Position numbers and translations under genes: made by a program. The notes beneath the pieces are model-generated. The model was not told where the DNA came from. It ran no database searches and was given only the letters and a program-made list of their open reading frames with translations. DNA of 62,919 nt, counting the filler, from Octopus bimaculoides (taxonomy: Eukaryota), in the NCBI RefSeq assembly GCF_001194135.2. It is 8 parts of 7 records of this genome, joined end to end, with 100 filler letters (N's around TTAATTAATTAA, not from the genome) between each part and the next. Parts side by side here need not be neighbours in the genome. Positions count along the whole stretch, not along the records: positions 24,320 to 30,935 come from NC_068982.1; 7 more parts are not named here. One strand, given 5' to 3'. Of this stretch, positions 27,575 through 28,264 are shown in pieces. Positions within the stretch are counted from its first letter, which is position 1. Each line of letters starts with the position of its first letter.

Positions 27575-28264
27575 TCATACTTGGGTTAAATATTTGTCGA
27601 AATATGTCTCAATGTATGGGTATTGAGTAGGTGTCATCAAGTGATCGAATCGCTCTTGTTCTAAAGTTAAATCCTTCACAGAATGTTCCAACTGATACAA
27701 CTTGCCAAGTGTTGTGATTTCGGCTGGTGTTAATGTTTCCAATAAATTGTGTAAAGCATTCCGTCGGATCGCCGCAAATGATGACTGGAATCGACATTCC
27801 ATAGGTGAACTTAGACGTCTGAAACAATCCGCCTTATTCAATTCAGAATCGTTCTGATAGGAAATGCCTTCATTTTTTTCCTGGTTTAACACGGATTTCT
27901 CTTCATCTATTGCCGAATATTTTCCATCTTTTTTTTCTTCGACCGTTTCAACGCCTTCGGCGTCGTCATCGTCGTCGTCATCGTCATTCTCATTTTCATC
28001 GTCGCCTTCATCACCACTAATGCTATTTTCTTCATCAGTATATTTCTCACATCGATGGTCAACCGAATTGGACTGATGCGCAATATTTTTCGACAGCCAG
28101 TTAACGGCTTCTTGATTTAACCCTTCCATTATATTGGCCAAAGCATTTCTGCGAATGCGACGGTAGGGCCCGTATTTCAAATATACTTCGTTATCAAGCA
28201 TGTTGATGAGATATGAGAGATTATTTGCTTGGTAAGAAAATTCACAGGGCAGCGACGATACCAT
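27575..28264 (-). CDS. Intronless 229-aa acidic protein with two RRNAL (PKI-like PKA pseudosubstrate) modules; uncharacterised
   Basis: Uninterrupted non-repetitive ORF from ATG to TGA, free of microsatellite or TE motifs; internal repeat Y34-K59 / F163-K188; poly-Asp linker; upstream TATA, CArG and CRE; no upstream ATG between the inferred TSS and the start. Confidence 0.9.
   Translation of the reverse strand: MVSSLPCEFSYQANNLSYLINMLDNEVYLKYGPYRRIRRNALANIMEGLNQEAVNWLSKNIAHQSNSVDHRCEKYTDEENSISGDEGDDENENDDDDDDDDAEGVETVEEKKDGKYSAIDEEKSVLNQEKNEGISYQNDSELNKADCFRRLSSPMECRFQSSFAAIRRNALHNLLETLTPAEITTLGKLYQLEHSVKDLTLEQERFDHLMTPTQYPYIETYFDKYLTQV

What the first reader, a model, noticed from the sequence alone, without database searches (positions are those of the whole stretch)
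27575..28264. Candidate bivalent PKI-like inhibitor of PKA: two RRNAL pseudosubstrate motifs in one intronless protein
Seen: RRNAL occurs twice (residues 38-42, nt 28153-28139; residues 167-171, nt 27766-27752). Established: PKI-alpha inhibits the PKA catalytic subunit through FIASGRTGRRNAIHD, using Arg at P-3/P-2, Ala at P0, a hydrophobic P+1, Arg at P-6 and Phe at P-11. Site 2 (FQSSFAAIRRNALH) has Phe exactly at P-11, Leu at P+1 and His at P+2. Site 1 (YRRIRRNAL) has Arg at P-6. Canonical PKIs are ~75 aa with one site. Inference: a 229-aa protein with two sites joined by an acidic flexible linker could capture two catalytic subunits, and may be an undescribed cephalopod or molluscan PKA inhibitor family.
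Basis: partly seen in the sequence, partly recalled or inferred. Interest (0 to 1): 0.9.

Follow-up and report, generated by a model that had tools for sequence, protein, structure and literature searches.

The report
Two-headed PKI-like kinase inhibitor gene
An octopus single-exon gene encodes a disordered protein carrying two conserved copies of the decoy-substrate motif that the PKI proteins use to block protein kinase A; it looks like a divergent, duplicated PKI that nobody has annotated, but its activity is untested.

Summary
The minus-strand ORF 27575-28264 is real and carries RRNAL twice, at the stated coordinates. It is a protein-coding gene under purifying selection: dN/dS is 0.16-0.27 overall and about 0.05 in the two motif-bearing modules.

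The two motifs are one ~26-residue module that was duplicated. RRNAL is invariant in all 14 modules of the seven genes found: four octopods and three genes from more distant, unnamed taxa.

Similarity to PKI goes beyond RRNAL:
- Pfam PKI is the top hit for four relatives, but below threshold.
- PKI-alpha is the top hit of a module profile against PDB sequences.
- hhalign gives E 8e-6 for the C-terminal module.
- Flank-only permutation tests give p about 0.002 (C module) and 0.04 (N module).
- One ortholog aligns 18/44 with frog PKI-alpha, from the pseudosubstrate through the nuclear export signal.

Caveats:
- The window protein itself scores nothing against Pfam PKI.
- The P-11 Phe and P-6 Arg are not kept consistently across relatives.
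- The likely start codon is M22, giving 208 aa.
- Inhibition of PKA and bivalency are inferred, not shown.

Verdict: a probable divergent PKI-like PKA inhibitor with a duplicated inhibitory head, a new variant of a known kind.

The parts
27575..28264 (-). Whole ORF (229 aa plus stop). It forms a single coding exon.
   Evidence: dN/dS is 0.16-0.27 against three relatives. Contigs of other octopus species are colinear with it.
28199..28201 (-). Probable true start codon M22 (MLDNEV...). It gives a 208-aa product whose N-terminus, M-x-D-x-E, resembles MTDVE of PKI.
   Evidence: Argonauta DNA similarity starts at about 28206. The L008 ortholog starts MLDNEV. The context is ATCAACATGC, with A at -3. 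The upstream ATG at 28262-28264 is also present in two Octopus contigs, so it is not excluded.
28079..28189 (-). Module 1 (res 26-62), EVYLKYGPYRRIRRNALANIMEGLNQEAVNWLSKNIA. This is the N-terminal PKI-like head.
   Evidence: Almost invariant in octopods. dN/dS is about 0.05. hhalign against PKI gives E 2.9e-4. The flank test gives p=0.042.
28139..28153 (-). Site 1 RRNAL (res 38-42), with Arg at P-6, P-5, P-3 and P-2, Asn at P-1, Ala at P0 and Leu at P+1.
   Evidence: Invariant in all relatives.
27830..28078 (-). Acidic low-complexity linker (res 63-145, 37% Asp+Glu).
   Evidence: It evolves fastest, with dN/dS 0.2-0.55 and indels. The P0007/P0011 paralog has a Ser-rich linker in its place. AF2 pLDDT is below 50.
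27809..27820 (-). RRLS (res 149-152), a consensus PKA phosphorylation site 15 residues upstream of site 2.
   Evidence: Kept as RRLS or RRFS in three octopods, SRLS in P0002, and absent from the distant relatives.
27692..27790 (-). Module 2 (res 159-191), FQSSFAAIRRNALHNLLETLTPAEITTLGKLYQ. This is the C-terminal PKI-like head.
   Evidence: hhalign against PKI gives 84% probability and E 7.9e-6. The flank test gives p=0.0019. BLASTP against frog PKI-alpha gives 9/17, E 8e-4.
27752..27766 (-). Site 2 RRNAL (res 167-171), with Phe at P-11, His at P+2 and Asn at P+3 (Asp in all relatives), then Leu-Leu.
   Evidence: Relatives read RRNALHDLL, against RRNALHDIL in reptile, bird and frog PKI-alpha.
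27662..27691 (-). LEHSVKDLTL (res 192-201), which fits a class 1a nuclear-export-signal pattern starting at P+22.
   Evidence: Regex match conserved in all four octopods. The PKI-alpha NES starts at P+16/P+18. The L008 ortholog has LYLLQLTI at P+19, and this aligns with the PKI NES LKLSELDI.
27578..27661 (-). Conserved C-terminal tail (res 202-229), ending YFDKYLTQV-COOH.
   Evidence: Almost invariant in octopods. Function unknown. The last three residues fit a class I PDZ-ligand pattern (from my own knowledge of the pattern).

Best explanation
The ORF is a real single-exon gene for a roughly 208-aa (at most 229-aa) intrinsically disordered protein. It is most likely a divergent relative of the heat-stable PKA inhibitors (PKI) in which the inhibitory head has been duplicated.

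Proposed mechanism (inferred, not shown):
- Each RRNAL segment lies in the substrate cleft of a free PKA catalytic subunit as a decoy substrate. Arg at P-3 and P-2 and Leu at P+1 make the substrate contacts, and Ala at P0 cannot be phosphorylated.
- The upstream aromatic and basic residues add affinity, as the high-affinity region of PKI does.
- The NES-like motif after the second head would let the complex be exported from the nucleus, as with PKI.
- Two heads joined by an acidic flexible linker of about 85 residues could bind two catalytic subunits. Alternatively they could give two sites of different affinity.

Shown: the gene, its selection, the duplication, motif invariance and graded sequence similarity to PKI. 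Inferred: binding, inhibition, export and stoichiometry.
For: Coding and constrained:
- dN/dS is 0.16-0.27 overall and about 0.05 in both modules against Argonauta.
- Nucleotide similarity to Argonauta is confined almost entirely to the CDS.

Motif conservation:
- RRNAL is invariant in 14/14 modules of 7 genes.
- These include distant relatives found by an exhaustive HMMER search of 1.84 billion proteins.

Link to PKI:
- Pfam PF02827 is the top hit for four relatives; in P0007 both modules match.
- PKI-alpha chains are the two best PDB sequence hits of the module profile.
- hhalign gives E 4.7e-6, 7.9e-6 and 2.9e-4.
- With RRNAL excluded or held fixed, the flanks still resemble PKI in register. 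The permutation test gives p=0.0019 for module 2 and 0.042 for module 1. HMM flank shuffles give p 0.001-0.026 for module 2 and 0.011-0.12 for module 1.
- P0008 aligns 18/44 with frog PKI-alpha from the pseudosubstrate through the NES into the acidic tail, E 4e-5.
- RRNALHDLL matches RRNALHDIL at 8/9 positions.
- An NES-like pattern sits at PKI-like spacing.
- AF2 finds no fold (mean pLDDT 41) and only weak helices at the modules. PKI is likewise disordered with incipient helices (PMC7234811).

Precedents:
- Inka1 inhibits PAK4 through two duplicated inhibitory boxes (PMC4674680).
- PKI-like pseudosubstrates also occur embedded in ARHGAP36 and SMO (PMC5059767; 10.1101/2021.07.05.451193).
Against: - All PKI scores are below Pfam's gathering cut-off, and the window protein itself gives no PKI hit at E<=10.
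- Most of the signal sits in a 9-residue stretch, and the finding was selected for that motif in the first place.
- The known affinity determinants are inconsistent. In the window, module 1 has Lys at P-11, and the L008 ortholog has Ile at P-6 there. Module 2 never has Arg at P-6. Phe moves to P-10 in Argonauta.
- Conservation runs 20 or more residues downstream of RRNAL in both modules (for example NIMEGLNQEAVNWLSKNIA). PKI has no counterpart, which suggests an extra or different partner.
- AF2 places RRNAL inside helices, at low confidence, rather than in an extended segment.
- There is no expression, binding or activity evidence.
- I could not retrieve invertebrate PKIs to see whether this is simply the cephalopod PKI ortholog (one search listed only vertebrates).
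Confidence: 0.62

Rival explanations
1. The modules are amphipathic helical docking motifs for some other partner, and the resemblance to PKI is coincidental or superficial. One candidate is an LxxLL-type box: LHNLL/LHDLL in module 2 and LANIM/LANIL in module 1. On this reading the protein does not inhibit PKA.
For: Strong conservation continues well past P+5 in both modules, where PKI has nothing comparable. AF2 draws helices through RRNAL. The P-11 and P-6 determinants are not consistently kept. Pfam PKI scores are below threshold, and there is none for the window protein.
Against: Arg-Arg-Asn-Ala is invariant in 14/14 modules, which a hydrophobic helix face would not require. The flanks match PKI in register beyond chance. 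One ortholog aligns with PKI through the NES. PKI-alpha itself reads LHDIL at the same place, so the 'LxxLL' is part of the PKI pattern. No other family was detected.
Confidence: 0.22
2. It is a pseudosubstrate inhibitor, but of another basophilic AGC or CaMK kinase (for example PKG) rather than PKA. Or only one of the two heads is active, so the protein is monovalent.
For: Module 1 is unusually Arg-rich (YRRIRRNAL), which would suit several basophilic kinases. The two modules keep different subsets of the PKI affinity determinants. The PKI-likeness of the module 1 flanks is only marginal (p 0.04-0.12).
Against: RRNA-[ILV]-H-D-[IL]-L is the PKI signature, and PKI is the only family recovered. 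Both modules are under equally strong purifying selection.
Confidence: 0.12
3. The ORF is a chance open frame in repeat-rich non-coding DNA and not a gene.
For: The surrounding piece is largely microsatellite and interspersed repeat, with many spurious ORFs. No expression evidence could be verified.
Against: dN/dS is far below 1 while dS is saturated against Argonauta. The frame is intact in four octopods and in distant relatives. Similarity to Argonauta is essentially confined to the ORF.
Confidence: 0.01

Closest known systems
PKI-alpha/beta/gamma (cAMP-dependent protein kinase inhibitors, Pfam PF02827)
   Same: Shares the pseudosubstrate RRNA[ILV]; in module 2 the match extends to RRNALHD[IL]L, against RRNALHDIL in reptile, bird and frog PKI-alpha. 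Some modules have an aromatic residue at P-11, Ser at P-8 and Arg at P-6. Both start M-x-D-x-E. An NES-like motif lies about 20 residues after the pseudosubstrate, followed by an acidic tail. Both appear disordered (PMC7234811).
   Different: It has two heads instead of one and is 208-229 aa instead of about 75. It has an acidic linker of about 85 residues, extra conserved helical segments after each head, and a conserved Tyr-rich C-terminus. Scores are below the Pfam cut-off.
Inka1 (FAM212A), endogenous PAK4 inhibitor
   Same: An endogenous, largely disordered kinase inhibitor whose substrate-mimicking inhibitory box is duplicated within one polypeptide, with both copies active (PMC4674680).
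   Different: No sequence relationship. It targets PAK4 and has Pro rather than Ala at P0.
PKI-like pseudosubstrate motifs embedded in larger proteins (ARHGAP36, Smoothened)
   Same: Short decoy-substrate segments that block PKA-C outside the PKI family (PMC5059767; 10.1101/2021.07.05.451193).
   Different: Those are single motifs in large multidomain or membrane proteins. Here the whole small protein is built around two such motifs and also resembles PKI beyond the motif.
PKA regulatory subunits (RI pseudosubstrate, RII substrate inhibitor sequences)
   Same: They use an RRxA/S-hydrophobic inhibitor sequence in the same cleft (PMC7234811).
   Different: No cyclic-nucleotide-binding or dimerisation/docking domains were detected.

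Membership tests
PKI (Pfam PF02827) | Scores at or above the Pfam gathering cut-off (25 bits) | tested here: not met
   The window protein has no hit at E<=10. Relatives score 14.4-20.7 bits (E 5e-4 to 0.05), with PKI as the top family each time.
PKI (Pfam PF02827) | Pseudosubstrate R-R-N-A-[ILV] (Arg at P-3 and P-2, Ala at P0, hydrophobic at P+1) | tested here: met
   Present twice in the window, and invariant in 14/14 modules of 7 genes.
PKI (Pfam PF02827) | High-affinity region: Phe at P-11 and Arg at P-6 upstream of the pseudosubstrate | tested here: inconclusive
   In the window, module 1 has R at P-6 but K at P-11, and module 2 has F at P-11 but A at P-6. P0007/P0011 module 1 has both. 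The registers shift in Argonauta and L008.
PKI (Pfam PF02827) | Leucine-rich nuclear export signal about 16-25 residues after P0 | tested here: inconclusive
   A class 1a pattern, LEHSVKDLTL, lies at P+22 in all octopods. L008 has LYLLQLTI at P+19, which aligns with the PKI NES. This is a pattern match only; export was not tested.
PKI (Pfam PF02827) | Small (70-80 aa) protein with a single inhibitory site | tested here: not met
   208-229 aa with two sites, against 75-78 aa with one site in 17 PKIs.
PKI (Pfam PF02827) | Intrinsically disordered, with incipient helices at the functional motifs | tested here: met
   AF2 mean pLDDT is 41 and pTM 0.17, and the only helices, all low-confidence, lie at or just after the two modules. 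Compare PMC7234811.
PKI (Pfam PF02827) | Inhibits the free PKA catalytic subunit with high affinity | not testable with these tools
   This needs a kinase assay or binding measurement. Multimer structure prediction with PKA-C was not available.
PKA regulatory subunit | Cyclic-nucleotide-binding domains | tested here: not met
   No such Pfam hit in the window protein or its relatives.

The most novel reading that the evidence does not exclude
A true bivalent endogenous PKA inhibitor. Both heads bind catalytic subunits at once, or bind with avidity to clustered C subunits. The NES couples this to nuclear export, the C-terminal TQV motif may tether it to PDZ scaffolds, and PKA itself may feed back through the RRLS site next to head 2. 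This would be a cephalopod-specific elaboration of cAMP signalling control with no vertebrate counterpart.
Probability: 0.25. Interest if true: 0.75.

Novelty: new variant of a known kind. Interest (0 to 1): 0.58.

Why it matters
PKI is the textbook pseudosubstrate inhibitor. It terminates nuclear PKA signalling, and all described PKIs are proteins of about 75 residues with one head.

A lineage-specific version with two conserved heads would be a natural experiment in inhibitor valency. It could show how avidity, stoichiometry or two affinity classes shape PKA buffering.

It occurs in animals whose learning and neural plasticity depend heavily on cAMP/PKA. It would also assign a function to proteins now labelled 'hypothetical' or left unnamed. 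The peptides are short enough to test directly.

Tried and rejected
- **Whole-protein Pfam and PDB sequence searches:** they gave only noise from the acidic run (eIF3c, IPMK, HRD1 and similar). Rejected as compositional.
- **Word-indexed protein search with the 42-column module profile:** nothing at E<=10. The profile was too short for a database of 5.8 billion sequences, so that search was wasted.
- **PKI-profile search for invertebrate or cephalopod PKIs:** 807 hits, but only the top 120 are shown and all are vertebrate. Whether cephalopods also have a canonical one-head PKI stays open.
- **Three hits of the exhaustive search (P0005, P0006, P0010):** these are internally repetitive junk and were discarded.
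- **Single-module phmmer against PDB:** no PKI found. Only the profile did.
- **Literature search for 'RRNAL':** returned OCR noise. Searches for invertebrate or cephalopod PKI, or for two-site PKI, found no description. The one exception is a remark that invertebrate PKIs exist, such as C. elegans K09E9.4.
- **Fold search:** not run, because the AF2 model is too poor.
- **Transcript evidence:** attempts to decide whether the Logan contigs are transcripts (A-runs, poly(A) signals) were inconclusive.
- **Source organism:** the organism behind ENA assembly ERZ21867824 and the P0011 runs could not be named. It shares no repeats with the octopus loci.
- **tRNA-derived SINE idea for the flanking repeat:** no tRNA was found.

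Full report
**1. The observation**

The real piece of the window (24320-30935) is AT-rich and full of microsatellites and interspersed repeats. Most ORFs in it are repeat artefacts. The one exception is the minus-strand ORF 27575-28264, which is 229 codons plus a stop.

RRNAL occurs at residues 38-42 (nt 28139-28153) and 167-171 (nt 27752-27766), exactly as reported.
- Site 2 has Phe at P-11, Leu at P+1 and His at P+2.
- Site 1 has Arg at P-6, and also at P-5.

Given the protein's composition, one RRNAL is expected 2e-4 times. Only 1 of 200,000 shuffles contained two RRxA[ILVMF] motifs.

The two motifs are not independent, however. BLASTP of the N-terminal region against the C-terminal region aligns 26 residues with 11 identities: YRRIRRNALANIMEGLNQEAVNWLSK against FAAIRRNALHNLLETLTPAEITTLGK. 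The protein therefore contains an internal duplication of one module.

**2. It is a real gene**

A word-indexed search found three close relatives besides the window's own protein (P0001, the window protein from M22):
- two from assemblies of sequencing runs (P0002 and P0003, 87-89% identity over the alignment);
- one annotated 'hypothetical protein' from Argonauta hians (P0004, 64%).

The contigs carrying P0002 and P0003 are colinear with the window over 1.4-2.1 kb at about 83% identity. In the Argonauta chromosome, apart from one 57-nt match just upstream, similarity is confined to the coding region and begins at about nt 28206.

Nei-Gojobori dN/dS values:
- 0.16-0.27 over the whole protein;
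- about 0.05 in each module against Argonauta, where dS is about 1 or more;
- 0.2-0.55 in the acidic linker, which also carries indels.

The spurious-ORF reading is rejected.

The start codon is ambiguous.
- In favour of M1: the upstream ATG is also present in two Octopus contigs.
- In favour of M22: conservation with Argonauta begins just upstream of it, M22 has A at -3, and the most distant ortholog begins MLDNEV.

I take M22 (a 208-aa product) as the likelier start.

**3. Distant relatives keep both motifs**

An exhaustive HMMER search of 1.84 billion representative proteins, using a profile of the C-terminal 85 residues, returned seven hits. Three are internally repetitive junk. The others are the octopus cluster, P0007 (236 aa), P0009/P0011 (230 aa, indexed in 111 blocks of the collection) and P0008.

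P0007 and P0011 have the same architecture with a Ser-rich instead of an acidic linker:
- head 1: ...LFSSSQRKYRRNALFNIFEGL...
- head 2: ...CYNISFSRVRRNALHDLLETLTQDDIEKLKNLYQ...

P0008 is the 3' part of a gene at locus L008. Its 5' part, in another frame, reads MLDNEVTVFQTSYIRVRRNALGNILEGLDQRALAWLAE. The frame change lies next to a C-run, and the caller also read a TGA as Trp, so the call is unreliable. The locus is clearly the ortholog of the octopus gene and has both heads.

P0007 and P0008 come from the same assembly. That organism therefore has two paralogs.

Across seven genes and 14 modules, R-R-N-A-L is invariant, as is a downstream Leu, and an acidic residue at P+6 is almost so.

The organism behind these three genes could not be named. 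The loci share no repeats with the octopus loci. That it is another cephalopod lineage is my inference.

**4. Relationship to PKI**

Sequence searches:
- No Pfam family reaches threshold.
- PF02827 (PKI) is nonetheless the top family for P0007 (E 5.4e-4, 20.7 bits, both modules matched), P0011 (4.9e-3), P0004 (0.03) and P0008 (0.049, matched through profile positions 16-51, which is into the NES).
- The window protein itself gives nothing.
- A profile of the 11 module sequences searched against all PDB chain sequences ranks PKI-alpha first and second, at E 0.039 and 0.36.

Profile-profile comparison (hhalign):

| Query | Target | Probability | E-value |
|---|---|---|---|
| All modules | PKI alpha/beta/gamma | 86% | 4.7e-6 |
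| C-terminal module | 17 PKIs returned by the tools | 84% | 7.9e-6 |
| N-terminal module | 17 PKIs returned by the tools | 40% | 2.9e-4 |

The finding was selected for RRNAL, so I tested the flanks alone.
- With RRNAL excluded and the register anchored, the flanking columns match PKI better than column permutations: p=0.0019 for module 2 and p=0.042 for module 1. The contributing positions are P-11 (aromatic), P-8 (Ser), P-6 (Arg, module 1) and P+2 to P+5 (H-D-[IL]-L, module 2).
- With RRNAL fixed and the flanks shuffled, real sequences beat shuffles against a PKI HMM: p 0.001-0.026 for module 2 and 0.011-0.12 for module 1.

Further points of similarity:
- PKI-alpha of reptiles, birds and a frog reads RRNALHDIL. 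The cephalopod module 2 reads RRNALHDLL, an 8/9 match. The window species has HNLL.
- P0008 aligns 18/44 with frog PKI-alpha at E 4e-5. The alignment runs from the pseudosubstrate through LYLLQLTI, which pairs with the NES LKLSELDI, into an acidic tail.
- The window protein aligns 9/17 at E 8e-4, including the P-11 Phe.
- All four octopods carry a class 1a NES pattern (LEHSVKDLTL) starting at P+22. In PKI-alpha the NES starts at P+16/P+18, and in L008 at P+19.
- Both PKI and this family start M-x-D-x-E.
- AF2 with the six-sequence alignment finds no fold (mean pLDDT 41, pTM 0.17). It predicts only low-confidence helices at the modules. This agrees with PKI's known behaviour as a disordered protein with incipient helices at its high-affinity and NES regions (PMC7234811).

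**5. Interpretation**

The best reading is a divergent PKI-like protein whose inhibitory head has been duplicated. Head 1 sits at the N-terminus, as in PKI. Head 2 is followed by the NES-like motif, as in PKI.

Inhibition of PKA-C by decoy-substrate binding is inferred from the established PKI mechanism (PMC7234811; PMC4674680). It is not shown here.

Bivalency is plausible for three reasons:
- Both heads are equally constrained.
- The linker is long, acidic and disordered.
- There is a precedent for duplicated inhibitory boxes in Inka1 (PMC4674680).

Bivalency is nonetheless untested.

Against a simple PKI reading:
- Scores are below threshold.
- The affinity determinants are kept only partly. 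In the window, module 1 has Lys at P-11, and the L008 ortholog has Ile at P-6 there. Module 2 never has Arg at P-6. Phe shifts by one residue in Argonauta.
- Conserved sequence downstream of each head has no PKI counterpart. This leaves room for another partner or another basophilic kinase.

**6. Novelty**

The literature held here mentions invertebrate PKI homologs only in passing, naming C. elegans K09E9.4 (PMC4674680). It describes neither a cephalopod PKI nor a two-site PKI. The only named relative is a 'hypothetical protein'.

I could not retrieve invertebrate PKIs for comparison. I therefore cannot say whether this is the cephalopod PKI ortholog or an additional family.

I classify it as a new variant of a known kind and rate its interest as moderate to high, pending a simple kinase assay.

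Noticed in passing
window 27809-27820 (-), residues 149-152: RRLS is a consensus PKA phosphorylation site (R-R-x-S) 15 residues upstream of the second pseudosubstrate. It is RRLS or RRFS in three octopods, SRLS in P0002, and absent in the distant relatives. It could allow feedback phosphorylation by the kinase the protein is proposed to inhibit.
   Followed up: partly
window 27578-27586 (-), residues 227-229: The C-terminus is ...YLTQV-COOH in all four octopods. The L008 ortholog ends ...ATHV under the standard code. Both fit the class I PDZ-ligand pattern [ST]-x-V-COOH, which hints at scaffold tethering. The P0007/P0011 paralog ends ECKA and does not fit.
   Followed up: no
window 28199-28264 (-): Two candidate start codons exist. 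The upstream ATG (M1) is kept in two Octopus contigs, and Argonauta also has an upstream ATG. Sequence conservation, the Kozak context and the distant ortholog all favour M22.
   Followed up: partly
window 25043-25161 and 30817-30935; also 24334-24519 vs 25149-25325: There are dispersed repeat copies, 81-93% identical to each other. Several matches at about 80% lie in the Argonauta locus L001. This looks like a cephalopod interspersed (SINE-like) element. No tRNA-like part was detected.
   Followed up: partly
L008:9835-10420: The ortholog in ENA assembly ERZ21867824 changes reading frame next to a CCCC run between its two heads. Its called protein P0008 reads a TGA as Trp. This is either a homopolymer assembly error or a pseudogene. 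The database protein covers only the second half of the gene.
   Followed up: partly
L007:10001-10711; P0011 contigs L009-L012: A paralogous two-head protein (P0007/P0011, 230-236 aa) has a Ser-rich instead of an acidic linker. Its first head carries the full PKI determinant set: F at P-11, S at P-8, R at P-6, then RRNAL. It is indexed in 111 blocks of the collection. No octopus counterpart was seen.
   Followed up: partly
window about 26350-26400: A run of N sits inside a TA microsatellite. This is an assembly gap within the real piece, which holds 44 N in total.
   Followed up: no
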